A DNA stretch of 64,000 nucleotides from Macrostomum lignano (taxonomy: Eukaryota): NCBI GenBank assembly GCA_002269645.1, contig NIVC01001167.1:62001-126000 (forward strand), given 5' to 3'. Both the position numbers and the translations under genes were made by a program. Every line of letters starts with the position of its first letter. The first letter of the stretch is position 1. The notes beneath the pieces are model-generated. The model saw nothing but the letters and a program-made list of their open reading frames with translations, made no database searches and was not told the DNA's origin. This document shows, one piece after another, positions 6,851-54,904 of this stretch.

Positions 6851-9317
6851 TCAAAACGGCAGCAGCCGCAGGTACTCGCTGGCCGTGACGCATTCGCAGG
6901 TGTCGCAGCCGAAGGCGTCCTGCCTGCTGCCGTAGAAGCAGCCGCAGCTCCGGTTGGGGCAGCGGCATCCGCAGCCGACCTGGCACCCGGTGGCCTCATC
7001 AATTTCAAATCCGTGATGGCCGCAGCTTCGGGAGCAGCGCGGCTTGGCTGGACACCTGCTAGCTGCTGCTGGCTGCAAGCAGTGACACGCATGGCAACCG
7101 TAGGCGTCCTTAGCAACAGTGAAATTGCCAGCCTGACCGCAGCTGGAGATGCACTGGTTGAGGTCGGGGCAGTTGCAAGCGCAGCCGGGAAGCAGGCAGC
7201 CCAGAGAGTCCCGCAGGTGACCGTGCGGGCCGCAGCTGTTTGAGCAGCTGGGCTCAGTCTGTGAGCACCTGTTCGCTGGCGATTGGCCAGCGCATGAGCA
7301 GGTCAGACAGCCGGAGTTCGAATCCTCGCTGATGGAGAACTGCTGCCGGGGACAATTGGACGGGCACAGGCGGTCCATGGCGTTGGGCTGCTGGAGGCTG
7401 GATTTAGTGATGCAGGGCTGGGAGGCTGGCAGCTGCTGAGCTGCAGAGTGAGACCTGGAGCCGCCAGAGCAGGCTGAGCACAGCTGGCAGCCGAACCTGT
7501 CAATCTCCCAGCGCAGGCAGCTCTCGCCAACTGGACAGGCCTTTCAATTGAGGATTTGGGCGAGGGATTTTAACACCTCTCTGAACAACAATGATTGCAA
7601 AATTGCAAATCCAAATTCTTACACTTTAAATAAATCAGCTGCAATTATTTTCGTGCATGGAAATTTTTTATTCCGAGTCAAACGTGATTATAAATTCATC
7701 ATTAGCAAGGCGAAATAATAAGTGGGAAGTGAGGAAAAATCGCCTTATCACTAACCAGATCCTCCTCCCTTTTCACCAAGAAAAATCGCCTTTCCAACCA
7801 AAATTCTTAACGAAAAATCACATTTCCCCCAAAATAATTGTCCTAAAAGTACAAATAAAAATCGCCCTCCTCTCCCCATCCCAAGAAAAATCGCCTCCTC
7901 CCCCATCCCAAGAAAAATCGCCTCCTCCCCCATCCCAAGAAAAATCGCCTCCTCCCCCATCCCAAAAAGAATCGCCCTTCCCCATCCCTAGAAAAATCGC
8001 CCTCCTTTCCCATCCCTAGAAAAATCGCCCAGAAAGTAGGTACAAATCGCCCCCGGAACTTGTGAAAGCACAGTCAGGCGGACAATCCATCCATCATTCA
8101 CCTGTCTGGCAGGCGGGCACCGGCATGAGCAGTCCCTGACGCAGCCCCGATCGTCACGAGACTCGCCACTAGCGTAGCCGTAAGATCCGCAACTGTTGGG
8201 ACAGCGGAGCAGACACGGCGGCGGCGGCGGAGGCGGCGTGGTCAAAGGCTCCGGCGGGTCCTGCTGACAGACGCACACTGGACAGCCTTCAGTATTCGAA
8301 TCGCTACCAGTTGCAGCAGAACCCCGCGAGACGAGCCTAGCTGTTGCCGATGCCAGGCCCAAATCTGAGCAGGCCCTTGAGCAACTAAGGCGAGCTTCAT
8401 CTCGAGGTGGACAGCGGCAGCGACAGAGGGGACACCCGGCTGAGTCAGTCTGGAATCCGGACGGGCAGGAGAGGCGGCAGGCTGATTTGAAGAGCACCAT
8501 AGATGAAGATTCCGAGCAGCTGGGCGGAGGGCGGCAGATGCCGATTGGACACCCGCTGGAATCCACTTGCTGTCCTGCGGGGGGGGCGAAAGGCGATGTC
8601 TTATATTGGCAAAAATGTGCCTTACACTGTCAAACGCCTAGACGTGATAAAGGAGAGGCAGTTTATTTAAACAGGCAAGGCGTAGGTTACCTGCTGGCCC
8701 TTAAAAGGGCCGTTTTAGGTTTTAAAAAATTGTATGTAACTCGTGTAAATGTGAAGCAATGCTATCTTTCGGAAAAAGAGGGGCGTCTCCTTTGTTACTC
8801 GTAACTGTCGATAACTCATGCTGACGCCTGACATCCAATTCCAAACCAAAGGTTCATATTCAATTATTCATAAGTCGGTATAAGCCACACTAGCGGGCCC
8901 TAAAAGGGCCGTTTTAACTCAAAAACTGGCTTATTTAAACTGGTGTAGTGTAGTGTAGGGCCGGGAAGGTTGTTAGTTAATTCTCAAGGGAAGCTTACCA
9001 TAAGTACAGAATCCAATAGCATCTTTGTTCGTGCCGGGACAGTTATTTCTCATCTTTGTCTCCTCGTCAGGAGCCGTCTTTGCTGTCGTCAAATTCAGCG
9101 CATTCTCGGGGCAGCTGCAGCCGGTGAGCAGACCCGCTGAGCATATCTGATTGATTCTTGCCGGTTTTAACGACTGACAGGTGGCGCACAGGCTTCGACA
9201 TTGAGAATGATGCTCTGCAGTTGAGGAGGAGGAGACTGGTTTGACGCTGCCAAAGATTATCAGAGCCAGTAGGGCAACAGATAGAAATAGCAATTGATGC
9301 TGAGGCGCCATTGTCAT
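6851..9317 (-). CDS. Secreted Cys-rich protein with ~10 antistasin-like repeats, 493 aa; exons 9317-8999, 8574-8102, 7540-6851
   Basis: Signal peptide (LLFLSVALLALIIFGSVKP). Repeated C-x3-C-x2-G-x3-D-x2-GC-x2-C-x-C modules such as CRLSCPSGFQTDSAGCPLCRC. Phase-1 junction reads CTYG|QQVDSSGC and completes one module; phase-0 junction ARQ|ACPVGESC; total 1482 nt. Confidence 0.85.
7790..8052. repeat. ~30-bp minisatellite (aaaaatcgcctcctcccccatcccaag) in antistasin-gene intron 2
   Basis: Tandem units inside the intron. Confidence 0.85.
8696..8716 (-). other. Histone-3'-stem-loop-like element AAAAC-GGCCCT-TTTA-AGGGCC
   Basis: Perfect 6-bp stem and 4-nt loop with A-rich 5' flank; second copy at 8896-8915 has a 3-nt loop. 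Confidence 0.6.
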
Positions 9318-18984: not shown

Positions 18985-21900
18985 ATGGATCCCAGCTTGT
19001 TTCAGCATCATCATCAATCGTCCATATTTTATCCGCACAGCTTCGACCCTCATCAGCAGCCCCCGATGCCCGCCTGTCACGCTCAGCAGCAATTTCCCAA
19101 TCAGCCTCATCATCAGCACCAGCAGCTCCAGCATCAGCAGCATCAGCCAGCCGGCAAGAAGCGCGGCCGTCTCGACCCCCGCCTCCGTCGCATCCATCAG
19201 CGCAAGGCGGCCAATCAGCGCGAGCGCAAGCGGATGCGCTCCATCAATGCCGCTTTTGAAGGCCTACGAAGGCGCCTGCCGGTGGAGCAGTCCGAGGACA
19301 GGAGGCTGTCCAAGGTGGAGACGCTCAAGCACGCCATCCAGTACATTCAAGGCCTCGCCGATCTGCTCAGCGCTTTGGAGGCCGACGAGGCCAGGACCAA
19401 CCCTGATGGCGTGGCCGCCAGGAGGAGGGCCAAGATTGTCCTGCTGTGCAGGACTGCCAATGATGAGGGGTCTTCGACGGCTTCGGCTGCTGCTGGCAGT
19501 GGCTGGCAAGGTGAGTTAATTGAGCTTGATTCTCATGGGTGAGATGGATCTCCCTCTCCGCTGTCTACCCTCTCCCTCTCCGCTGTCTACCCTCTCCCTC
19601 TCCGCTGTCTACCCTCTCCCTCTCCGCTGTCTACCCTCTCCTTCTCCGCTGTCTACCCTCTCCCTCTCCGCTGTCTACCCTCTCCTTCTCCGCTGTCTAC
19701 CCTCTCCTTCTCCGCTGTCTACCCTCTCCTTCTCCGCTGTCTACCCTCTCCTTCTCCGCTGTCTACCCTCTCCTTCTCCGCTGTCTACCCTCTCCCTCTC
19801 CGCTGTCTACCCTCTCCCTCTCCGCTGTCTACCCTCTCCCTCTCCGCTGTCTACCCTCTCCTTCTCCGCTGTCTACCCTCTCCTTCTCCGCTGTCTACCC
19901 TCTCCTTCTCCGCTGTCTACCCTCTCCTTCTCCGCTGTCTACCCTCTCCCTCTCCGCTGTCTACCCTCTCCCTCTCCGCTGTCTACCCTCTCCCTCTCCG
20001 CTGTCTACTCTCTCCTTCTCCGCTGTCTACCCTCTCCTTCTCCGCTGTCTACCCTCTACTTCTCCGCTGTCTACCATCTCCCTCTCCGCTGTCTTACCCT
20101 CTCCCTCTCCGCTGTTTACTCTCTCCCTCTCCGCTGTCTACCATCTCCCTCTCCGCTGTCTACTCTCTCCTTCTCCGCTGTCTACCCTCTCCCTCTCCGC
20201 TGTCTACTCTCTCCTTCTCCGCTGTCTACCCTCACCCTCTCCGCTGTCTACTCTCTCCTTCTCCGCTGTCTACCCTCACACTCTCCGCTGTCTACCCTTT
20301 ACTATAGAACCATCTCCAACATGTAGCAAAATGTTTAACTTATATTATTAATTGGGCCAAAAAGTCAATCAGCAAGCATTAATAATTCAAATAGAAAATA
20401 TAACTAAACAAAGATTGCATTTTTTTGGTGAGACTACTATGTAGCTCTATTATATGCGCCAATGTATAAATATATCGATATCTATACAGCTCTGCGATAT
20501 AACTGCATTAATAAATGATTGATCGAACCGAATAGAAGAATCGCCGCCTGCCTGCATGCAGCTCACTCGCTTTTATAGAATGCAAACACTTGATGTTGGA
20601 GGCTGCGGCTATAGCAGCAAAAGGCGCGGGAACTGCCAGCAGTATAAGAGGGAGAGACAGAAAAACGGCCCCTCGAGACATTGCGCAACCGTTCCTGCAG
20701 GCAGCTAGATTTTGAAACCCTCTTATACTTGTTAATCCTTATCACACTAAATCCTTTGTTGAGAAGTCCGCCCAGCAGCAGACTTAATGCGAATGATGTA
20801 ACTATGCACACACAGCAGCATATTCTGGGTTTGAGAATGACGGACACTTCAGTTGGGGAAATTATGAAATTGTTGCCAAGTTGCTGAGAGAAGGTGCTGA
20901 AGGATTGAAGGAGGCTGGGTCTGCTCAGTATGGAGCTGCTTGAGAAATCTCTCAAGGAAAAAGTGGGTCCGGGAGTTGCTTCGGGGTTTTTCACTCTTTC
21001 TGACCCGTTATGCTCTTCAGGAAAAGTCGCTGTTTCTTCAACGGTTGTTTCTTCAGGGGCTGCTTCTTCAGGGGCTGCTTCTTCAGGAGATGTTTCTTCA
21101 GGGGCTGCTTCTTCAGGAGATGTTTCTTCAGGGGCTTAGTTCTTCAGCGGCTGTTTCTTCAGGGGCTGCTTCTTCAGGGGCTGTTTCTTCAGGAGATGTT
21201 TCTTCAGGGGCTGTTTCTTCAGGAGATGTTTCTTCAGGGGCTGTTTCTTCAGGAGATGTTTCTTCAGGGGCTGTTTCTTCAGGAGATGTTTCTTCAGGGG
21301 CTGTTTCTTCAGGAGATGTTTCTTCAGGGGCTGCTTCTTCAGGAGATGTTTCTTCAGGGGCTGTTTCTTCAGGAGATGTTTCTTCAGGGGCTGTTTCTTC
21401 AGGAGATGTTTCTTCAGGGGCTATTTCTTCAGCGGCTGTTTCTTCAGCGGCTGTTTCTTCAGTGGCTTGGTTCTTCAGGGACTGTTTCTTCAGGGGCTGT
21501 TTCTTCAGGGGCTGTTTCTTCAGAAGATGTTTCTTCAGGGGCTATTTCTTCAGGGGCTGTTTCTTCAGCGGCTGTTTCTTCAGTGGCTTGGTTCTTCAGG
21601 GACTGTTTCTTCAGGGGCTGTTTCTTCAGGAGATGTTTCTTCAGGGGCTATTTCTTCAGGGGCTGCTTCTTCAGGAGATGTTTCTTCAGGGGCTGCTTCT
21701 TCAGGAGATGTTTCTTCAGGGGCTGTTTCTTCAGGAGATGTTTCTTCAGGGACTGTTTCTTCAGGGGCTGCTTCTTCAGGAGATGTTTCTTCAGGGGCTG
21801 TTTCTTCAGCGGCTGTTTCTTCAGGAGATGTTTCTTCAGGGGCTGCTTCTTCAGGAGATGTTTCTTCAGGGGCTGCTTCTTCAGGAGATGTTTCTTCAGG

Positions 21901-27900: not shown

Positions 27901-28443
27901 GTAGGGTAGAGAGAGTAGGGTAAAGAGAGTAAGGTAGAGAGAGAGTAGGGTAGAGAGAGTAGGGTAGAGAGAGTAGGATAGAGAGAGTAGGATAGAGAGA
28001 GTAGGGTAGAGAGAGTAAGGTAGAGAGAGAGAGTAGGGTAGAGAGTAGGGTAGAGAGAGTAGGGCAGAGAGTAGGGAGAGAGTAGGGTAGAGAGCAAGGA
28101 ACTAAAAAACAAAAGTAATACTTGTGCATCTCTCACCATGCCTCCCCAAACGGTCGCCCCGGTTCCAGCGCCCCAGCAGGCCATCCCGGACCTCGCAGAC
28201 AGCTGCCTGCTGGATTCTGACGACTCTCTACAGATGATGGACGACGATCCGGAAGGCGAGCTCGGCGAAGTCTGGGGCCACTCACTGGCTTGGATAGACC
28301 AGAGAGGCGATTTCGAACGGCTCATCCGCTGTCCGAACGGCCCGGAAGATCCGACGGAGGCTAGCAGGTCGCGGGTTCGAGCCCGGATTTGGCGACCAAC
28401 CCAAACGGCCACGGGAATGTGGTTCGGCGGAGGGGACGTTTGA
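18985..28443 (+). CDS. PTF1A: PTF1a/Fer1-type bHLH transcription factor, ~266 aa; exons 18985-19510 and 28169-28443 (alternative acceptor at 28199 possible)
   Basis: bHLH QRKAANQRERKRMRSINAAFEGLR...RLSKVETL; linker KIVLLCR resembles vertebrate KVIICHR; exon 2 has GHSLAW (C1, vertebrate GHSLSW) and RARIWRP (C2, vertebrate RTAKVWTP). Phase-1 donor CAAG|GTGAGT matches acceptor ccggttccag|. Confidence 0.88.
19548..20297. repeat. 22-bp pyrimidine-rich minisatellite (ctctccctctccgctgtctacc), PTF1a intron
   Basis: About 34 units starting about 35 nt after the donor. Confidence 0.95.
20563..22647 (-). pseudogene. Possible decayed type-I membrane/mucin-like gene: signal-like start, (EETAP/EETSP)n stalk, hydrophobic segment and tail
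   Basis: The minus frame of the 15-bp repeat reads EETAP and runs in frame into ORF 20563-20994 containing ICCCVCIVTSFALSLLLGGLL-NK. ATG at 22647 begins MILIIVIFHLDFVAIA. Disrupted by 16-nt units and gaa-taa variants. Confidence 0.35.
21040..22595. repeat. 15-bp minisatellite (ttcttcaggggctgt/ttcttcaggagatgt) with occasional 16-bp units
   Basis: About 100 units. Confidence 0.95.
23085..24215. repeat. 21-bp minisatellite (ctaccctgtctactctgttat), PTF1a intron
   Basis: Tandem units, most homogeneous in 23600-24180. Confidence 0.95.
25232..28092. repeat. Purine-rich 14/26-bp satellite (gagagtagggtaga; gagtgtaggctacagagtagggtaga), PTF1a intron
   Basis: About 2.9 kb of tandem units with higher-order blocks. 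Confidence 0.95.
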
Positions 28444-30647: not shown

Positions 30648-31560
30648 ACCAAGATCCTGAACTGGAATCCCAAGATCCTGAACTAGAATCCCAAGATCCT
30701 GAACTGGAATCCCAAGATCCTGAACTGGAATCCCAAGATACTGAACTGGAATCCCAAGATCCTAAACTAGAATCCCAAGATCCTGAACTAGAATCCCAAG
30801 ATCCTGAACTAGAATCCCAAGATCCTGAACTTTAAATCCCAAGATCCTGAACTGGAATCCCAAGATCCTGAACTTAAATCCCAAGATCCTGAACTGTAAT
30901 CCCAAGATCCTGAACTGGAATCCCAAGATCCTGAACTGGAATCCCAAGATCCTGAACTGGAATCCCAAGATCCTGAACTGGAATCCCAAGATCCTGAACT
31001 GGAATCCCAAGATCCTAAACTGGAATCCCAAGATCCTGAACTGGAATCCCAAGATCCTAAACTGGAATCCCAAGATCCTGAACTGGAATCCCAAGATCCT
31101 GAACTGGAATCCCAAGATCCTGAACTTAAATCCCAAGATCCTGAACTGGAATCCCAAGATCCTGAACTGGAATCCCAAGATCCTGAACTGGAATCCCAAG
31201 ATCCTGAACTGGAATCCCAAGATCCTGAACTGGAATCCCAAGATCCTAAACTGGAATCCCAAGATCCTGAACTGGAATCCCAAGATCCTGAACTGGAATC
31301 CCAAGATCCTGAACTGGAATCCCAAGATCCTGAACTAGAACCCCAAGATCCCAATTTCGAACCCCAAGATCCCGAATTAGAACCCCAAGATCCCGATTTC
31401 GAATCCCAAGATCCCGATTTCGAATCCCAAGATCTCGAATTAGAACCCCCAAGATCCCGAATTAAACCCCAAGATCCCGAATTAAACTTCAAGATCCCGA
31501 ATTAGAACCAAAAGATCCCGAATTAGAACCCCAAGATCCCAAATTAGAACCCCAAGATCT
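30648..31560. repeat. 21-bp minisatellite (ccaagatcctgaactggaatc)
   Basis: About 43 units, some of 20 nt. Confidence 0.95.
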
Positions 31561-32113: not shown

Positions 32114-35100
32114 TCACAGGCCCCAATTGAAGCCGCCAGGGCGCTCTTCTTCTGGAAGAGGCTGATAATTGGGATCTTGCTGGCCTGGGGGCGCGTCGAA
32201 CAGCGTTTTGCTGTGGGAGACCAGGGTGGGCAAAAGTGAATTTTTTGCTTACCGACTTAACTGAGGAGTGTGACCCATGCTGTCACCGTGACTGTGACCC
32301 ATGCTGTCACCGTGACTGTGACCCATGCTGTCACCGTGACTGTGACCCATGCTGTCACCGTGACTGTGACCCATGCTGTCACCGTGACTGTGACCCATGC
32401 TGTCACCGTGACTGTGACCCATGCTGTCACCGTGACTGTGACCCATGCTGTCACCGTGACTGTGACCCATGCTGTCACCGTGACTGTGACCCATGCTGTC
32501 ACCGTGACTGTGACCCATGCTGTCACCGTGACTGTGACCCATGCTGTCACCGTGACTGTGACCCATGCTGTCACCGTGACTGTGACCCATGCTGTCACCG
32601 TGACTGTGACCCATGCTGTCACCGTGACTGTGACCCATGCTGTCACCGTGACTGTGACCCATGCTGTCACCGTGACTGTGACCCATGCTGTCACCGTGAC
32701 TGTGACCCATGCTGTCACCGTGACTGTGACCCATGCTGTAACTGTGACCCATGGTGTCACCGTGACCGTGACCCATGCTGTAACTGTGACCCATGCTGTA
32801 ACTGTGGTTGTGACCCATGCTGTAACTGTGACCCATGCTGTCACCGTGACTGTGACCCATGCTGTAACTGTGGCTGTGACCCATGCTGTCACCGTGACTG
32901 TGACCCATGCTGTAACTGTGGCTGTGACCCATGCTGTAACTGTGACCCATGCTGTCACCGTGACTGTGACCCATGCTGTCACCGTGACCCATGCTGTAAC
33001 TGTGACCCATGCTGTAACTGTGACCCATGCTGTAACTGTGGCTGTGACCCATGCTGTAACTGTGACTGTGACCCATGCTGTAACTGTGGCCCATGCTGTA
33101 ACTGTGGCTGTGACCCATGCTGTAACTGTGACTGTGACCCATGCTGTAACTGTGACCCATGCTGTAACTGTGACCCATGCTGTAACTGTGGCTGTGACCC
33201 ATGCTGTAACTGTGACCCATGCTGTAACTGTGACTGTGACCCATGCTGTAACTGTGGCTGTGACCCATGCTGTAACTGTGACCCATGCTGTAACTGTGGC
33301 TGTGACCCATGCTGTAACTGTGACCCATGCTGTAACTGTGGCTGTGACCCATGCTGTAACTGTGACCCATGCTGTAACTGTGGCTGTGACCCATGCTGTA
33401 ACTGTGGCTGTGACCCATGCTGTCACTGTGACTCGGACCGAGTATTTACTAATCATTAAGGGCAGTGACTCACAGGAATTGAGGAGTCCGCAGCACGCGA
33501 AAGCCGTTACGCTGTCTTGGGAAAACATCTTCAAGAAAATAATACACGTGACCTGCTGCGATGCCTGCAATAATAATAAGAAACATATTGATTTGCTGCT
33601 GTGTGATCTATTAATTTAGGATTGGGATCTATAGGTTTTAGTATTAGGATCTACAGATTTTAGTATTGTGGTCTATAGACTAATGATTAGTATCTATAGC
33701 ATACATGCGCAACCTCTGAAATTCGGTCGGCCATGCGACTTAGTTTTAACAAAAATGCGACGTAGTTTTTGGCCAAAAAATGCGACTTACATGTAAAAAA
33801 ACCCTAAAGCAAAATTAACGCAACTTTGGGTAAACGGCAGGAGTAACTATGACTGTCTTATTAAGCCAATATGCCTCGTCAGCTACTTAGTACTACTACT
33901 TGATTATTTTTTCGGGTGGGCATTTTTGCGACTTCCTTGGTTGGCCGCCAAATCGGTCGGCCGGATCGGCCGACTCGGCCGACTGTTGCGCATGTATGAT
34001 CTATAGATTGAGGATTACGATCTATAGATTTAGGATTAGGATCTATAGATTTAGGATTAGGATCTATAGATTTAGGATTAGGATCTATAGATTTAGGATT
34101 AGGATCTATAGATTTATGATTGCGATCTGTAGATTTAGTATCTGGGTATCTGTAGATTTTAGTATTGGGATCTATAGATTAATAAATACGAGTTTCTAGT
34201 GAATAAAACTTGTGGGAAAAGGTCTAAATTATGACAGACTCACCCATAGCGTCAACAATAATAACGTTTCCCAGTAGGAACGAAAAAGCCATCAGCACCC
34301 AAGGCAAGTAGGGAGCTTGAAAAGTGAGCAAACCAAAGAAATTCATCCTGATGAATGGATTCCTTCGACTCCAAACGTAGACAATCATGATTGTGAAAGC
34401 CTGGCTAAGGAATACCATATTCACGAATAGGCCTGCGAGCTGAAATTAAAAAAAGGAAATGATAAAACGGCCCTTTTCAGTTCTGCTACTTGCTATACAC
34501 AATTAAAATTAAGAGAAAATAACATAACAATCTAAACCTATGACTATTGAACACAAACGTAAAACAAATATTGAATTTCGCAATTTAATAAATATTGCTG
34601 CTATCTAGTCTAGGGTGTTAATAAAATATTTTCGTAAAACGACCCTTTTAAGGGCCACCACTACTTATCTACAAATTTTAATGAAATCAACTAATATTGA
34701 TAATCGAGACGCAGAGTCGACTTATTAAAAACACTTTTACAATAATGTTTACAAAAACGGCTCTTTTTAGGGCCGCTGCACTCAGATGATCACTCACCGT
34801 CATGAAGCAACCGCCAAAGATGAACATGAGCGCAAAATCGCTGGTTCGGCCTCGGAACGAGTTTTCTTCAAGCATGCGACAGTACCGATAATTGAACACC
34901 ATATTAAAGAAGAAATTGAATCCAAATGTGCCAAAGAAGCAGAAGTTTGTAATTAAACGCCAAAGCTGAAAATTTACGGAAGACAAGATTTAGGCATTAA
35001 AAACTTTCAAAACAATCAACCAATATGAGATAATTTAAAATGATAAAATACGACTTACCTGTAGGTTCTTGAATATCAATGTTGGATGGAAGTACAGTTG

Positions 35101-38100
35101 AAATGGACTGACAATGTCCAATTGCTAAAAAAATGCGAAGAAAAGTACATTTATAAAGAAATCAATTCAAAAAAGATTTTAATCTACAATTATATTATGT
35201 CTATATAAATTTCAATTCATTAATAACATTCTTTAAAGCATGTTGAACAACTTAAATCATTAAGAATTTTTTGATAGCAATTTTAAAAACTATTCAATTT
35301 TATATCAATGCTGCCACATCAATATTATTCATAATCTACGAGGGGTGTCCAAAAAGTAGTCATACTTTTAACTGTAGCTCTCGTTCTATAGCTTCCTGTG
35401 ATTTAAAATTTTATGAACTGATAGCAGCAAATCTCTTCTACAGACTGCTTTTTGAATTTTTTAAATTGATACCAGAGAACAAAAGTTATACCCACAAAAG
35501 TAACAGTACCTGTATCACAGAGTTACACAAATTATAGGCTGAGCTTCACGAGATCCATGCCGAGTAAGCTTCAATGAACTGTTGATTTCGGCTTGTCCAA
35601 CCTGTCAGCAATCTCTCTAATGGTCATTCGGGAGTCCTCGTCAAGAAGATTCAGAATGGAGTCCGTCAGTACATCAGGTCGATGAATGTATGGCCGCCCC
35701 GTCCGATGCTGATCTGCCAAGTCAATCCTTCCCTTGCTGAACTGCTCCATCCATCGATAAACTGTCATTTTGCTGACCACAGAGGATCCATGCGCAGAGC
35801 AAAGTTTTGCGTGAATTTCTGAGGCACCATGGCCAGCGCCCCAAAGAGTGAAGATAGTACTTTGCTGAGCAACAACTGAGTGCACATCCATGTGTGTTGT
35901 CGAGTATGGGCAATGAAATCAATTGCAAAATGCAAGCTCCTCTGTTTGCAAGTAAAGTAATGAATTTAATGCTTTATTTTTCTGCGCATGATTCTGTCCA
36001 TAGACAAATTTCAGTCAGTCACAGTGAGCATAATTTTGCAATTGGGCTTTGGTATTGCTTAAACAAGACATTTATCGATGCCTTCTTAATGAGTGAGTGC
36101 AGAAGTCGACTATCATAAATTTTGATATAGTTTGTGTAACTCTATGGTACAGGTACTGTTACTTTTGTGGGTATAACTTTTGTTCTCTGGTATCAATTTT
36201 AAAAATTCAAAAAGCAGTCTGTAGAAGAGATTTGCCACTATCAGTTCATAAAATTTTAAATCACAGGAAGCTATAGAAGGAGAGCTATGGTTAAAAGTAT
36301 CACTACATTTTGGACACCCCTCGTACCATTCCAGATTGCAGACTACAAAATTTGAGGGCCACATTGACCGATGACTATACTCTACAATTGTTAGAGCACC
36401 AAGAGGCCGTTCTCCCTACGTCAACCAAGATTAACCAAGACCCACTAAAACACTAGTTATGGCAAGCTTGTTTTACAAAAACCCACCATTCTGGGTAGTT
36501 CAAGGCACAGAAACTAACAATAGACAATGCTATACAATATCTGTAAGGAGAATTGCGAACCGTCACCAGCACCTACACAGCAATTGGCGAAAGTGTTGGT
36601 GAACTTATCATCCCACAACACACGACACACAAAACCTCAGCTGCTACAGGCGGAACTATTTAAGGGCCCATTTGATAACAAGGAGGCTGCATCTCGCACT
36701 ATGCAGTGTTGTCAATTACCAGACGAAACTTATTGCATTGACTTGGATTGCAATAGTTGCAGCGTGCTGCACCAAAAGATGGCCATTATCGAGGAGCAGA
36801 TGGACAGGCTCAAAAATGAGCTTCAAAGTGCCAAAGTGGCAACGTCTGAAAGGCACGACTTGCTACTGAAGGAGGTGGATGTGCACAAGTCAATGCAGAG
36901 GCGCTTGGAGGTGGCTAATGCTGAGATAGATGACCTGCACCAAGAAATTGGTCATCTCAGAACAACTGGCGAATCATCCAAATTTCAATCCAATGTTATT
37001 CGAATTATGCAAGACTTTGCCACTCAAAGCCTTGCAACAAGCCAAATCCCAGCTTCTTCTTCTTCTTTTTCAAGGCACCTCCGTGTGCGGACTGGCCAAT
37101 CTGGAGGGGGCAGTGGCCCCATGCTGCGAATGAGCTTTGGTAGCTCCTGCTATTTACGCTTCCCCATCGACCGAGGTCATATCCAAGATTCTGGGAAAAG
37201 ACCAATGAATGCCGCTTCTGGTGTCCGCCCCAAACGTGACTATTACAAGAGAGCAGAAGGCAGCTATTGAGCATGCGGTTGCTGAACTCCGTTGCAAGCC
37301 AGGTGACAAGCAGTTGCGAAAGCTCACTAGACTCCTCATTTGTTCCCTTTTTTCGACCTCGGAATTGTGTGTGACTACCGTGTCTGGCATGGCCAAGAAG
37401 CAGCAAATTTGTATGCCAGCAAATTGTCATATTGTGAGGACAATTACTCAGTTCCTCACAGCTGCTTCTCCTAATCCTCTACCAGATGGTCTTTTCTGCA
37501 ATTCATTCAAATATTGCTCATTGGATGCCCTCCAAAAAAAGAAAAGGATCAATTCTAGTACGCTAAGAAGTGGCAGGACCGATCAATCCTCTTCAACTGA
37601 CAAGATGAGTGTGCTAAGTGGTGGCGGGACCAATCAGTCTTCCTCAACCGAGACGAGTGCGCTAAGAAGCAGTGGGACTGATCAGTCCTCCTCAACCGAG
37701 ACGAGTGCGCTAAGAAGCGGCGGGACTGATCAGTCCTCCTCAACTGAGACAAGTGTGCTAAGAAGCGGCAGGACTGATCAGTCCTCCTCAACTGACGAGA
37801 CGAATGCAATAAGTGGCGGCAGGACAATAAAAAAGGGAGAAGCAAACAAAGCAGCAACCTTTTCAGAGCTCAAAGAGATCAAAGAGAAATGTTTGCAAAA
37901 CCTAGACAGTTTTTTTTGTAATATTCCCCCAGTTTGTATACTCGTATGCTGCTGCTAATAAGCATTACGGCTATTTGTTTTCAACTAATTGCAACTGTGT
38001 CAAACATGTGCCAGGATTAGTATATGGGAATCAAAATATTTTTTTTAATTGTTAAATGAATTGCTGTTCCATTGTTGAAACTGTTTAAATTCAACTAGAT

Positions 38101-43851: not shown

Positions 43852-52153
<8,302 letters not shown>

Positions 52154-52768: not shown

Positions 52769-53354
52769 CATTGCTCGGCAACCATTTTACCTCAAGAGCC
52801 GGAATAGAGCTTCTGGCTGCGGGCCAGATGAGAGTGGAAAGGAGAGGGAATAGAAGATGAGGGATGAGAGAAGAGATAGAAAGAGGAGAGAAGAGGGAGA
52901 GATTAGAGAGGGGAGAGGGAAGAGATAAGAGAGGGGAGAGAGGAGAGAAGAGAGGAGAGAGGAGAGATTAGAGAGGGGAGAGGGAAGAGATAAGAGAGGG
53001 GAGAGAGGAGAAATAAGAGAGGGGAGAGAGGAGACATAAGAGAGGGGAGAGAGGAGAAATAAGAGAGGGGTGAGAGGAGAGAGGAGAGATAAGAGAGGAG
53101 AGATAAGAGAGGCGAGAGGGAAGAGAGGGAGAGAGAGAAGAGAGGGGAGAGATAAGAGAGGGAAGAGATAAGAGAGGGGAGAGGGAAGAGATAAGAGAGG
53201 AGAGAGGAGACAGAAGAGAAGAGAGAGAGCTGAGAAGAGACACAAACCTTGAGAGGGCCGGATTGCTATTGTGAAATTTCAAAGGACACAAGAGACGGAT
53301 AGAGAGGCTTCGAGGGCCGCATGTGGCCCGCGTTCCGGAGTTTGCCGACCCCTG
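52769..53354. mobile_element. hAT-Charlie-like MITE (586 bp) with an internal GA-rich expansion (52835-53235)
   Basis: Right end gggccgcatgtggcccgcg...gtttgccgacccctg; degenerate left end cattgctcggcaacc; flanks atttaaat and attaaatc. Confidence 0.55.
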
Positions 53355-53382
53355 ATTAAATCATGGAATAATGTCAGAAAGT

Positions 53383-53402
53383 AAAACGGCCCTTCAAGGG
53401 CC
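53383..53402 (+). other. Histone-3'-stem-loop-like element AAAAC-GGCCCT-TCA-AGGGCC
   Basis: Same motif as at 8696 and 34636; 3-nt loop; intergenic. Confidence 0.5.
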
Positions 53403-54904
53403 ATACACTGTAGTAGGTATATATATAAAATTTTATACTCTTCAAAAATGTGTTGCTAAGTCATTAGTGTTATCATTTACGAGTAATTGCAAAGTTGGTT
53501 GCTTGAAGACCTGATTCAAGTTTAGGTCTCGTGTTTATTCACATTATTTACCTGCATTCTGTACATTGAATTGAGTTTTTTTTAAAATAACTTCATACAC
53601 TTTGCGGCGTTTGCCTTTCCTGTCTGTTTATAATAAAATTTCTGGTTTCTGTTGCTTTGTTTATTTGTTTCGTTTATTACCTGTTGTCTGTTGTAGCCAT
53701 GAATTAAATATACATTATTATTATTATATATTAATTTCGTGCGTTTTCCACAGATTGCAGACACCACGATTTCCACTAGTTAGTTAAAATATCACAGCTT
53801 AGTAACTGTTTTCTTTCGCAATTCTCTGTGTACACCGACCAGATCGTTGTAAAGTCTGTCTTTTCCTGTGCAACACCGGAAATATCTTAAAATTGCCAAG
53901 GCAAAAAACAGTCGTTCAATATTAATATGCTTACTACTCTACTGAAGTGCTTGAGTGAGTAGTGTGCTTAGTATTCTACTGCGAATGGTTTTTCCTAACG
54001 TTTTTTCCACAGTTTTTGTCATGTTTTTCTATTGAAACTCATTTGTTTCCAAAAGGTATTGAAATAGCAAATTCACTGTTCTGCAATATTATAAATCTAT
54101 AGGAATTGAGATTTATCTGTACTGTGTATTATAAATTACTCAAAGGTGCACTAATTAAATGTGTGTTTAGCATGTACGGCGCCTGAATGTCTATTGTTAT
54201 CTAATAAAATGACGTTATTTAATGTCGCTTTCACCATTATTAATAATAGTTTAATCAAATACTTTGAAATAATATGTATTAAATATATATACTACTTGTG
54301 AAAAGCGAAATTACGTTTTGTTAATTATTAATTATTAATAATAAAGCTGCAATATTGTTGTTACAGTTTGCTATTAATTACAGCTATAATAACAAATTAA
54401 TAACATAACCAATTGTCGAAAATTGCTGCTGCCATGGTGAAGAGTTTTCTCGGCTTGTTTATTTTTTAATGCAAGATTTACTTTAAACATGCCAAAATGA
54501 GTGCCTGTGGCACCAAAATGAGCGCTGACAACACCGATTCTGAAAATAATGTACATACAGTATATGTATATGTATATGTAGAATTCTTGGCTTTGTCCCT
54601 CCCTCCACCATAAAATACGTAACCCGGTTGTCCTACTTTGATTTCTTAATCTTTTAATCATGCGATTGAGGCTAGTGAGTAGAAGGCTATACATGATTCA
54701 AGTGTGATTTTCCTGAGCTGATACTGGCATCGGCATGTAAAAAAGCACGTCTAATATGCCAGTCCGTACATCACAGTCCAATTCAAAGCTCATTGTCAGC
54801 AGTTTCTTGCTTACTTTATTATTAAAAGCCCTTTAAAATCAGGTAAGGGTACTCGTAAGATGGCTTCGTAAACCAAAATTGCGCCAACAAAGATTAGAAC
54901 TTTT

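What the first reader, a model, noticed from the sequence alone, without database searches (positions are those of the whole stretch)
8696..8915. Two histone-mRNA-type stem-loops in the sense strand of a non-histone intron
The minus strand reads AAAAC-GGCCCT-TTTA-AGGGCC (8716-8696) and AAAAC-GGCCCT-TTT-AGGGCC (8915-8896). This matches the metazoan replication-dependent histone 3' stem-loop bound by SLBP, yet no histone ORF exists in the window. Six copies in 64 kb (also 34464, 34636, 34753, 53383) share the motif but little flanking sequence. It may be a dispersed micro-element or an unrecognised SLBP-linked intronic signal (inference).
Basis: partly seen in the sequence, partly recalled or inferred. 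Interest (0 to 1): 0.7.

Follow-up and report, generated by a model that had tools for sequence, protein, structure and literature searches.

The report
Scattered histone-type hairpin copies in flatworm
A 27-base sequence identical to the hairpin that ends histone mRNAs occurs six times in this stretch of Macrostomum lignano DNA with no histone gene nearby, and the copies look like decaying repeat relics rather than working RNA signals.

Summary
The window is Macrostomum lignano contig NIVC01001167.1. It holds six copies of a unit of about 27 nt, TAAAAC-GGCCCT-TTTA-AGGGCC-GCTAC, where shuffles predict 0.01. The core 20-mer is a genuine histone 3' stem-loop elsewhere. In metagenome contigs, 100 of 155 exact copies lie 15-184 nt (98 within 72 nt) downstream of H2A, H2B, H3 or H4 ORFs on the same strand. 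The window has no histone ORF.

The reading as an SLBP-linked signal is not supported:
- Only copy 8716 has the canonical 6-bp stem and 4-nt loop.
- The others have 3-nt loops, an A·C mismatch at the critical second pair, a G·U pair, or a degenerate 3' arm.
- Only one copy has an ACCA flank.
- No copy reaches the Rfam threshold. Scores are 28.1, 20.6, 20.6, 16.6 and two unscored, against 25.7-40.5 bits for real ones.
- Two copies are sense to their host intron, three are antisense and one is intergenic.

Flanks share nothing. Three copies share a non-histone GCT flank, which points to one repeat lineage. My best reading is decaying copies of a small dispersed repeat derived from a histone-type 3' end. 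How it spread is unknown.

The parts
8696..8722 (-). Copy 1. Perfect unit: T-AAAAC-GGCCCT-TTTA-AGGGCC, 3' flank AGCAG. Sense to the predicted host intron.
   Evidence: Folds at -13.9 kcal/mol. RF00032 score 20.6 bits against a gathering score of 34.
8891..8916 (-). Copy 2. T-AAAAC-GGCCCT-TTT-AGGGCC with a 3-nt loop, 3' flank CGCTAG.
   Evidence: Not reported by RF00032 even at E<=10 in a 311-nt search.
34463..34489 (+). Copy 3. 5' half intact (TAAAACGGCCCTTTTC), 3' arm degenerate (AGTTCT), flank GCTAC. Antisense to Derlin, about 20-45 nt from the Derlin 3' splice site.
   Evidence: No hairpin in the fold.
34635..34661 (+). Copy 4. GACCCT-TTTA-AGGGCC with an A·C mismatch at stem pair 2. The only copy with a histone-like ACCAC flank. 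Antisense to Derlin.
   Evidence: RF00032 score 28.1 bits, below 34. Only 4 bp form in the fold.
34753..34779 (+). Copy 5. A-AAAAC-GGCTCT-TTTT-AGGGCC with one G·U pair, flank GCTGC. Antisense to Derlin, about 20 nt from the Derlin 5' splice site.
   Evidence: RF00032 score 16.6 bits. Homeolog L003 has AAGGCC, which breaks a pair.
53382..53407 (+). Copy 6. T-AAAAC-GGCCCT-TCA-AGGGCC with a 3-nt loop, flank ATACA. It lies about 3.3 kb downstream of the last long HIPK ORF, so it is probably intergenic.
   Evidence: RF00032 score 20.6 bits.
20662..20671 (+). Possible seventh relic. Only AAAACGGCCC (10 nt) is kept.
   Evidence: My rough estimate is about 0.08 chance matches to this 10-mer in the window. 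Weak.
8575..8998 (-). Predicted intron 1 (GTAAGC...CAG) of an unannotated secreted Cys-rich gene. Hosts copies 1 and 2.
   Evidence: The only database relative is an M. lignano UniRef entry with 67% identity over 31% of the query. The model is inferred, with no RNA evidence.
34441..34796 (-). 356-nt intron of Derlin-2-like gene BOX15_Mlig028359g1. Hosts copies 3-5 on the opposite strand.
   Evidence: The intron position is shared with Nematostella Derlin-2.

Best explanation
The six sites are copies of one short dispersed repeat of about 27 nt, consensus TAAAAC-GGCCCT-TTTA-AGGGCC-GCTAC. Its core descends from a histone-type 3' stem-loop. The copies were seeded into unrelated intronic and intergenic DNA. 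The local clusters of 2-3 same-strand copies, 118-199 nt apart, probably arose by local duplication or repeated insertion. The copies are now drifting neutrally and do not act as SLBP/U7 processing signals for the genes they sit in.

What is shown: non-random occurrence, identity to real histone stem-loops, absence of histone ORFs, unrelated flanks, mixed orientation, and structural defects. What is inferred: common descent from one repeat lineage, suggested by the shared T at position -6 and the shared non-histone GCT 3' flank at two loci, and neutrality.

The vehicle of spread is not shown. My favoured guess is a mobile element whose own transcript or terminus carried a histone-type hairpin. 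Diverged transposase genes ending in this exact stem-loop do exist in other eukaryotes.
For: Non-random occurrence.

The exact 20-mer is a bona fide histone 3' stem-loop. 100 of 155 metagenome instances lie 15-184 nt (98 within 72 nt) behind core-histone ORFs on the same strand.

There is no histone ORF in the window. A neutrally decayed histone gene would not keep a hairpin at 90-100% identity while losing all coding signal.

Flanks are unrelated.

Single lineage: T at -6 occurs in 5 of 6 copies, against 7% at that position in real histone stem-loops. The first base after the stem is G or C in 2 of the 5 copies with an intact 3' arm, against 0% and 7% in 100 real ones. GCTAC, GCTGC and (C)GCTAG flanks are shared between the 8.9-kb and 34.5-kb loci.

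Decay: 3-nt loops in two copies, an A·C mismatch at pair 2, a degenerate arm, and a pair-breaking G>A in homeolog L003. There is no compensatory change.

Rfam scores of 28.1, 20.6, 20.6, 16.6 and two unscored compare with 25.7-40.5 bits for real stem-loops with the same core.

Orientation: 2 sense, 3 antisense, 1 intergenic.

Transposase and MADF-like genes with complete histone-type 3' ends are seen in metagenome contigs. A multi-copy non-histone family also carries the stem-loop.
Against: No transposon hallmark was found around any copy. There are no terminal inverted repeats, no target-site duplication, no coding remnant, and no Harbinger-like similarity in the window.

No more diverged copies were found at up to 3 mismatches. 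An old neutral family would be expected to leave such a tail.

The unit boundaries coincide with the minimal SLBP-binding RNA: 5-6 nt, the hairpin, then about 5 nt. That could also reflect selection.

Only 64 kb of independent M. lignano DNA could be examined. The homeologs are 99% identical and give no power to test constraint. The species' own histone 3' ends and its repeat library could not be retrieved.
Confidence: 0.5

Rival explanations
1. The hairpins are working SLBP (and possibly U7) sites in host or antisense transcripts. For example they could cause S-phase-coupled premature cleavage, termination or transcript marking.
For: The core is exactly a real histone stem-loop. Copy 8716 is canonical and sense to its intron. 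The unit length equals the minimal SLBP-binding element (own knowledge). There is no tail of badly decayed copies. Planarians have canonical stem-loop histone mRNAs, so the machinery exists in flatworms (PMC10954484).
Against: Five of six copies have defects at loop length, pair 2, the 3' arm or the 3' flank. There is no common purine-rich downstream box, which is visible at +14 to +16 in real genes. All copies are below the RF00032 gathering score. Three copies are antisense to Derlin. A homeolog has a pair-breaking change.
Confidence: 0.08
2. The hairpins are termination hairpins of rolling-circle (Helitron or Helentron-like) non-autonomous elements. Only the 3' hairpin and a few terminal bases are conserved between subfamilies, and bypass of the terminator leaves several same-strand ends separated by unrelated DNA.
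For: The hairpin is short and GC-rich. Same-orientation clusters have unrelated spacers. The hairpin is followed by CTAG/CTAC-like bases and then T in 4 of 6 copies. The window is 43% minisatellite, and such elements are known to seed minisatellites (own knowledge).
Against: Only 1 of 6 copies has a true CTRR end. The hairpin abuts the putative end instead of lying about 10 nt upstream. No 5' TC end or Rep/helicase remnant was found. An exact 20-nt identity to a histone stem-loop would need an extra capture event.
Confidence: 0.12
3. The copies are RNA-templated insertions of SLBP-protected 3' fragments of histone mRNA, about 26 nt long, captured during double-strand-break repair.
For: The unit size and both boundaries match the SLBP footprint (own knowledge). 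There are no target-site duplications or inverted repeats, the flanks are unrelated, and either orientation occurs.
Against: The shared non-histone 3' flank (GCT...) and the T at -6 argue for copying from a diverged master sequence rather than from histone mRNAs. The model does not explain same-strand clusters. The M. lignano histone 3' ends are unknown.
Confidence: 0.08
4. The palindrome is a DNA-level binding site, for a dimeric factor or architectural protein, kept in homotypic clusters. On this reading the likeness to the histone hairpin is incidental or reflects a shared factor.
For: The core is a perfect 16-bp palindrome. Copies occur in clusters of 2-3 sites in non-coding DNA, independent of gene strand.
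Against: The conserved flanks are asymmetric (TAAAAC on one side only). An exact 20-nt identity with histone stem-loops is not expected by chance. The defects break the palindrome.
Confidence: 0.06
5. The copies are a chance occurrence or an assembly or adapter artefact.
For: None beyond the short length of the motif.
Against: Shuffle expectations are 0.00-0.01 against 3-4 observed. The three Derlin-intron copies are present in three independently assembled homeologous contigs.
Confidence: 0.01

Closest known systems
Replication-dependent histone mRNA 3' stem-loop (Rfam RF00032, SLBP/HBP binding site)
   Same: The 5' flank, the 6-bp GC-rich stem and the U-rich 4-nt loop are the same. The 20-mer AAACGGCCCTTTTAAGGGCC is found verbatim 15-184 nt (98 of 100 within 72 nt) behind H2A, H2B, H3 or H4 ORFs in metagenome contigs.
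   Different: There is no histone ORF. The ACCA flank is present in 1 of 6 copies. No shared purine-rich downstream element is present. All scores are below the gathering score. The copies lie in introns in both orientations, and several have structural defects.
Transposon genes with histone-type 3' ends
   Same: The same exact stem-loop is used outside histone genes and is linked to mobile DNA. Transposases only 42-51% identical to each other keep it.
   Different: Those copies keep ACCCA plus a CCTCC(C/A)AGAAAGA-type box and follow an intact ORF. The M. lignano copies have neither, and the window has no Harbinger-like coding remnant. I found no publication on this in the held library.
Helitron/Helentron 3' terminal hairpins and their non-autonomous derivatives
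   Same: Both are short GC-rich hairpins conserved amid otherwise unrelated sequence. Both occur as same-strand multiples and in association with tandem-repeat-rich DNA.
   Different: The CTRR end and the hairpin-to-end spacing are not met. No 5' end or Rep/helicase was found.
Bacterial REP/BIME-type dispersed palindromes and intrinsic terminators
   Same: Both are dispersed hairpins of about 20-35 nt with sharp boundaries, sometimes clustered. On the opposite strand the unit reads hairpin plus GTTTTA, and the symmetric version occurs as terminator-like sites in long metagenome contigs.
   Different: The host here is a eukaryote and the sites lie inside spliceosomal introns. There is no RAYT-type transposase context.

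Membership tests
Histone 3' UTR stem-loop (RF00032 / SLBP site) | 6-bp stem with an intact second G-C pair, and a 4-nt loop with U at positions 1 and 3 | tested here: not met
   Met by copy 8716. Copy 34754 has one G·U pair. Not met by 8915 and 53383 (3-nt loops), 34636 (A·C at pair 2) or 34464 (degenerate arm).
Histone 3' UTR stem-loop (RF00032 / SLBP site) | A-rich 5' flank (AAA) immediately before the stem | tested here: met
   AAAAC precedes the stem in all six copies. This is the same as real instances.
Histone 3' UTR stem-loop (RF00032 / SLBP site) | ACCA/ACCCA 3' flank (cleavage region) | tested here: not met
   Only 34636 has ACCAC. The others have AGCAG, CGCTA, GCTAC, GCTGC and ATACA. 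In 100 real instances position +1 is A in 92% and G in 0%.
Histone 3' UTR stem-loop (RF00032 / SLBP site) | Purine-rich downstream element (U7 pairing) about 12-17 nt after the stem | tested here: inconclusive
   Real instances are enriched in A/G at +14 to +16. No common box is seen in the six copies. The M. lignano U7 sequence is unknown.
Histone 3' UTR stem-loop (RF00032 / SLBP site) | Location shortly downstream of a histone ORF on the same strand | tested here: not met
   tblastn with H2A, H2B, H3 and H4 gives no hit better than E=0.4 in the window. Real instances lie 15-184 nt behind such ORFs, 98 of 100 within 72 nt.
Histone 3' UTR stem-loop (RF00032 / SLBP site) | Covariance-model score at or above the Rfam gathering score (34 bits) | tested here: not met
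   There are 0 hits at gathering. Scores are 28.1, 20.6, 20.6 and 16.6, with two copies unscored. Real ones with the same core score 25.7-40.5.
Histone 3' UTR stem-loop (RF00032 / SLBP site) | Binding by SLBP and cleavage 4-5 nt after the stem | not testable with these tools
   This needs EMSA or CLIP and RNA 3'-end mapping.
Helitron 3' terminus | Hairpin about 10 nt upstream of a CTRR end, inserted between A and T | tested here: not met
   CTAG occurs in 1 of 6 copies, CTAC in 2 and CTGC in 1. The hairpin is 1-2 nt from these bases. T follows in 4 of 6 copies.
TIR transposon / MITE | Terminal inverted repeats flanked by a target-site duplication | tested here: not met
   No convincing inverted-repeat or duplication pair brackets any copy. 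One 13-nt direct repeat (8663 and 8931) is within chance expectation.
LINE/SINE 3' tail copies | Fixed 3' end with variable 5' truncation, and a longer shared 3' tail | tested here: not met
   Both boundaries are sharp in all six copies, and there is no shared sequence beyond about 27 nt.

The most novel reading that the evidence does not exclude
M. lignano carries a genome-wide family, possibly tens of thousands of copies, of histone-type stem-loops outside histone genes. At least the intact members are bound by SLBP. They would give introns, antisense transcripts or transposon RNAs a non-polyadenylated, S-phase-linked 3' end. That would be either a host or transposon use of the histone mRNA pathway, or a tag that routes transcripts to PIWI surveillance, as proposed for non-polyadenylated RNAs in planarians.
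Probability: 0.08. Interest if true: 0.8.

Novelty: new variant of a known kind. Interest (0 to 1): 0.42.

Why it matters
Histone stem-loops are regarded as essentially exclusive to replication-dependent histone mRNAs. A dispersed family of them in a regenerating flatworm would be a useful natural test of that view. It would show how specific the SLBP pathway is, and whether mobile elements borrow it. The transposase genes with complete histone-type 3' ends seen in metagenomes suggest that they do. It would also show how a functional RNA motif can become a genomic repeat.

In practice, any Rfam-style or motif-based annotation of histone 3' ends in M. lignano will meet many false positives. If the copies are only relics, the finding is a curiosity of a very repeat-rich genome.

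Tried and rejected
1. Homeolog comparison. L002 and L003 carry the same Derlin intron at 99% identity with all three copies. There is no empty site and no power to test constraint.

2. Homeologs of the 8.7-kb locus. The Cys-rich gene is not annotated, and an exact look-up of the exon-1 ORF found nothing.

3. More M. lignano DNA through a transposon protein. The mariner fragment search first timed out and then found nothing.

4. Homeologs of the 53.4-kb locus through HIPK. The annotated 828-aa product could not be rebuilt with canonical GT-AG models, so I abandoned this route.

5. The real M. lignano histone genes could not be reached with the tools. Metagenome histone genes with the same 20-mer served as the yardstick instead.

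6. Introner idea, rejected. The Derlin intron position is shared with Nematostella. A Lingula look-up failed.

7. tRNA/SINE idea. ARAGORN finds nothing near the copies.

8. snoRNA idea. The weak snR61 match at 34454-34546 scores 26.8 against a gathering score of 45 and is on the wrong strand for an intronic snoRNA. Rejected.

9. Decayed histone genes. Rejected because no coding trace remains although the hairpins are nearly intact.

10. '5'-truncated retroposon on the opposite strand'. Rejected once copy 34464 proved to be full length with a mutated arm.

11. Literature. No paper in the held library describes dispersed histone stem-loops or transposons that use them. The M. lignano genome paper does not mention them.
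Full report
**Origin of the window.** Spliced Derlin exons on the minus strand (35124-34243) are 100% identical to NCBI protein BOX15_Mlig028359g1 of the flatworm Macrostomum lignano. The locus fetched for that protein matches window 22114-49195 base for base. The window is therefore NIVC01001167.1:62001-126000 of assembly GCA_002269645.1. About 43% of the window lies in minisatellite arrays.

**Checking the observation.**
- GGCCCT-N3-5-AGGGCC occurs 3 times, against 0.00 in shuffles.
- The 21-mer AAAACGGCCCTTTTAAGGGCC with up to 3 mismatches occurs 4 times, against 0.01.
- The 15-mer TAAAACGGCCCTTTT with up to 3 mismatches gives 14 hits, against 1.58. These are the six copies, some also hit on the opposite strand because the core is palindromic, plus four chance hits inside a minisatellite.
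- No further diverged copies turned up.
- A 10-nt fragment at 20662 may be a seventh relic.

**The six copies, position by position.**

| Copy | 5' arm / loop / 3' arm | Defect | 3' flank |
|---|---|---|---|
| 8716- | GGCCCT / TTTA / AGGGCC | none (6 bp, 4-nt loop) | AGCAG |
| 8915- | GGCCCT / TTT / AGGGCC | 3-nt loop | CGCTA |
| 34464+ | GGCCCT / TTTC / AGTTCT | 3' arm mutated, no hairpin forms | GCTAC |
| 34636+ | GACCCT / TTTA / AGGGCC | A·C mismatch at the second pair | ACCAC |
| 34754+ | GGCTCT / TTTT / AGGGCC | one G·U pair | GCTGC |
| 53383+ | GGCCCT / TCA / AGGGCC | 3-nt loop | ATACA |

All six keep AAAAC before the stem, and five keep a T before that.

**Flanks and histone genes.** Outside this unit of about 27 nt the copies share nothing. 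A multiple alignment of 220-nt neighbourhoods has 40% column identity. blastn finds only the core. Smith-Waterman scores of 120-nt upstream and downstream flanks do not differ from shuffles. There is no histone ORF in the window or in the homeologs.

**Is it really a histone-type stem-loop?** Yes, for the core.
- 100 instances lie 15-184 nt (98 within 72 nt) downstream, on the same strand, of an H2A, H2B, H3 or H4 ORF.
- In those real cases the base after the stem is A in 92% and G in 0%. It is followed by C/A, C/A, A, and a purine-rich box appears at +14 to +16.
- Twelve of these contigs run through Rfam gave RF00032 scores of 25.7-40.5 bits for such sites.

The window copies score 28.1 (34636), 20.6 (8716), 20.6 (53383) and 16.6 (34754). 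Copies 8915 and 34464 are not reported even in 300-400-nt searches at E<=10. None reaches the gathering score of 34. The best-scoring copy owes its score to its ACCAC flank, but it has a broken second base pair. By established SLBP biochemistry that pair is critical.

**Genomic context.**
- Copies 8915 and 8716 lie in a predicted 424-nt intron (8998-8575, GTAAGC...CAG) between a signal-peptide exon and a Cys-rich exon of an unannotated minus-strand gene. They are therefore sense to that gene.
- Copies 34464, 34636 and 34754 lie in the 356-nt Derlin intron (34796-34441). Derlin is on the minus strand, so they are antisense to it.
- That intron position is shared with Nematostella Derlin-2. It is an old intron, not one created by an insertion.
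- Copy 53383 is about 3.3 kb past the last long HIPK ORF and is probably intergenic.
- Orientation relative to host transcription is therefore mixed, which argues against a signal that acts on the host pre-mRNA.

**Homeologs.** M. lignano is a recent polyploid. Two homeologous contigs (L002, L003) carry the same Derlin intron at 99% identity, with all three copies present. The only change inside a copy is a G>A in L003 that breaks a stem pair. The sample is too small to measure constraint. It does show that the copies predate the duplication and are not assembly artefacts.

**Interpretation.** Whole decayed histone genes are excluded. The hairpins are 80-100% intact, yet no coding trace remains of the most conserved genes known.

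Independent capture from many different histone mRNAs is unlikely. The copies share features that are rare or absent in real histone stem-loops: T at -6 (7% in real ones), and a GCT(A/G)(C/G) 3' flank in three copies at two loci (G at +1 occurs in 0 of 100 real ones). That pattern points to one diverged master lineage, that is, a repeat family with its own consensus.

The spectrum of defects, the absence of compensatory changes, the sub-threshold scores and the mixed orientation fit neutral decay better than a maintained SLBP site.

How the unit spread is not shown. No inverted repeats, target-site duplications, tRNA-like parts or transposase remnants accompany it. Helitron-type end rules are not met.

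Two observations still keep a mobile-element vehicle the most plausible source:
- Three diverged PIF/Harbinger-like transposase genes (42-51% identical to each other) and MADF-like ORFs in metagenome contigs end in this exact stem-loop plus ACCCA and a purine box.
- A GC-rich multi-copy family carries the stem-loop with no histone ORF.

**Points that keep the functional reading alive at low probability.**
- The unit boundaries equal the minimal SLBP-binding element.
- No heavily decayed copies were seen.
- Copy 8716 is canonical and in sense.
- Flatworms have stem-loop histone mRNAs (PMC10954484).

**Limits.** Only 64 kb of independent M. lignano sequence could be examined. The species' own histone 3' ends, its U7 snRNA and its repeat library were out of reach. 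No RNA or binding data exist here.

**Verdict.** The motif is real and unusual. The 'micro-element' reading is supported. The 'SLBP-linked intronic signal' reading is not.

Noticed in passing
L018:382-1824, L037:316-1758, L118:~1219-2433 (metagenome contigs): Three full-length PIF/Harbinger-like transposase genes are 42-51% identical to each other. Each is followed within about 45-105 nt, on the same strand, by the exact histone stem-loop 20-mer, then ACCCA and a CCTCC(C/A)AGAAAGA-type box. MADF-like ORFs in L031 and L116 show the same arrangement. This suggests transposon genes that use histone-type 3' end processing. I found no paper on it in the held library.
   Followed up: partly
L006, L019, L020, L030, L053, L061, L062, L095, L114 (metagenome contigs, mostly Ga0058701): A GC-rich multi-copy family is conserved over at least 500 nt and ends in GGGCTTCCATTG, the histone stem-loop, then ACCAAACCTTCCATCAAAGAT. 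No core-histone ORF is present. L114 has two stem-loops 104 nt apart and L061 has a convergent pair.
   Followed up: partly
L015, L039, L078, L085, L107, L109, L117: A symmetric form AAAACGGCCCTTTTAAGGGCCGTTTT(T) occurs in long contigs. It looks like a bidirectional bacterial intrinsic terminator, so the 20-mer is not specific to eukaryotes.
   Followed up: no
L070, L072: Histone genes with this stem-loop are linked on one contig to 18S, 5.8S, 28S and 5S rRNA genes.
   Followed up: no
window 35340-36420: A defective mariner-like element. It has an N-terminal helix-turn-helix ORF fragment (35574-35918, minus strand) between near-identical terminal blocks of about 100 nt. A protein search with the fragment found nothing.
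   Followed up: partly
window 33690-33995: A MITE-like insertion with terminal inverted repeats CATACATGCGCAAC...GTTGCGCATGTATG sits inside the 21-nt minisatellite GATCTATAGATTTAGGATTAG (33615-34180).
   Followed up: no
window 6854-9317, minus strand: An unannotated multi-exon gene for a secreted protein with CPxGFxxDxxGCPxCxC (antistasin-like) repeats. The only database relative is an M. lignano UniRef entry named 'Stc1 domain-containing protein', with 67% identity over 31% of the query.
   Followed up: partly
window 43852-50105, plus strand: An HIPK-like kinase gene. The annotated product is 828 aa. Exons 43852-44679, 45590-45904 and 47869-48288 plus any single or double canonical GT-AG continuation do not give 828 aa. 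The deposited model may use non-canonical or additional exons.
   Followed up: partly
window 30703-30799 and ~28330-28400: The ARAGORN 'tRNA-Pro(agg)' of 97 nt lies inside the 21-nt minisatellite 30649-31559 and is probably a false call. A tRNA-like B box (GGTTCGAGCCC) at about 28380 suggests a tRNA-derived SINE fragment.
   Followed up: no
window 53250-53355: This sequence ends ...GGGCCGCATGTGGCCCGCGTTCCGGAGTTTGCCGACCCCTG, 28 nt upstream of copy 53383. It resembles the terminus of a Tc1/mariner-type MITE, which is recognition from memory only. A purine-rich minisatellite (52843-53240) lies inside it.
   Followed up: no
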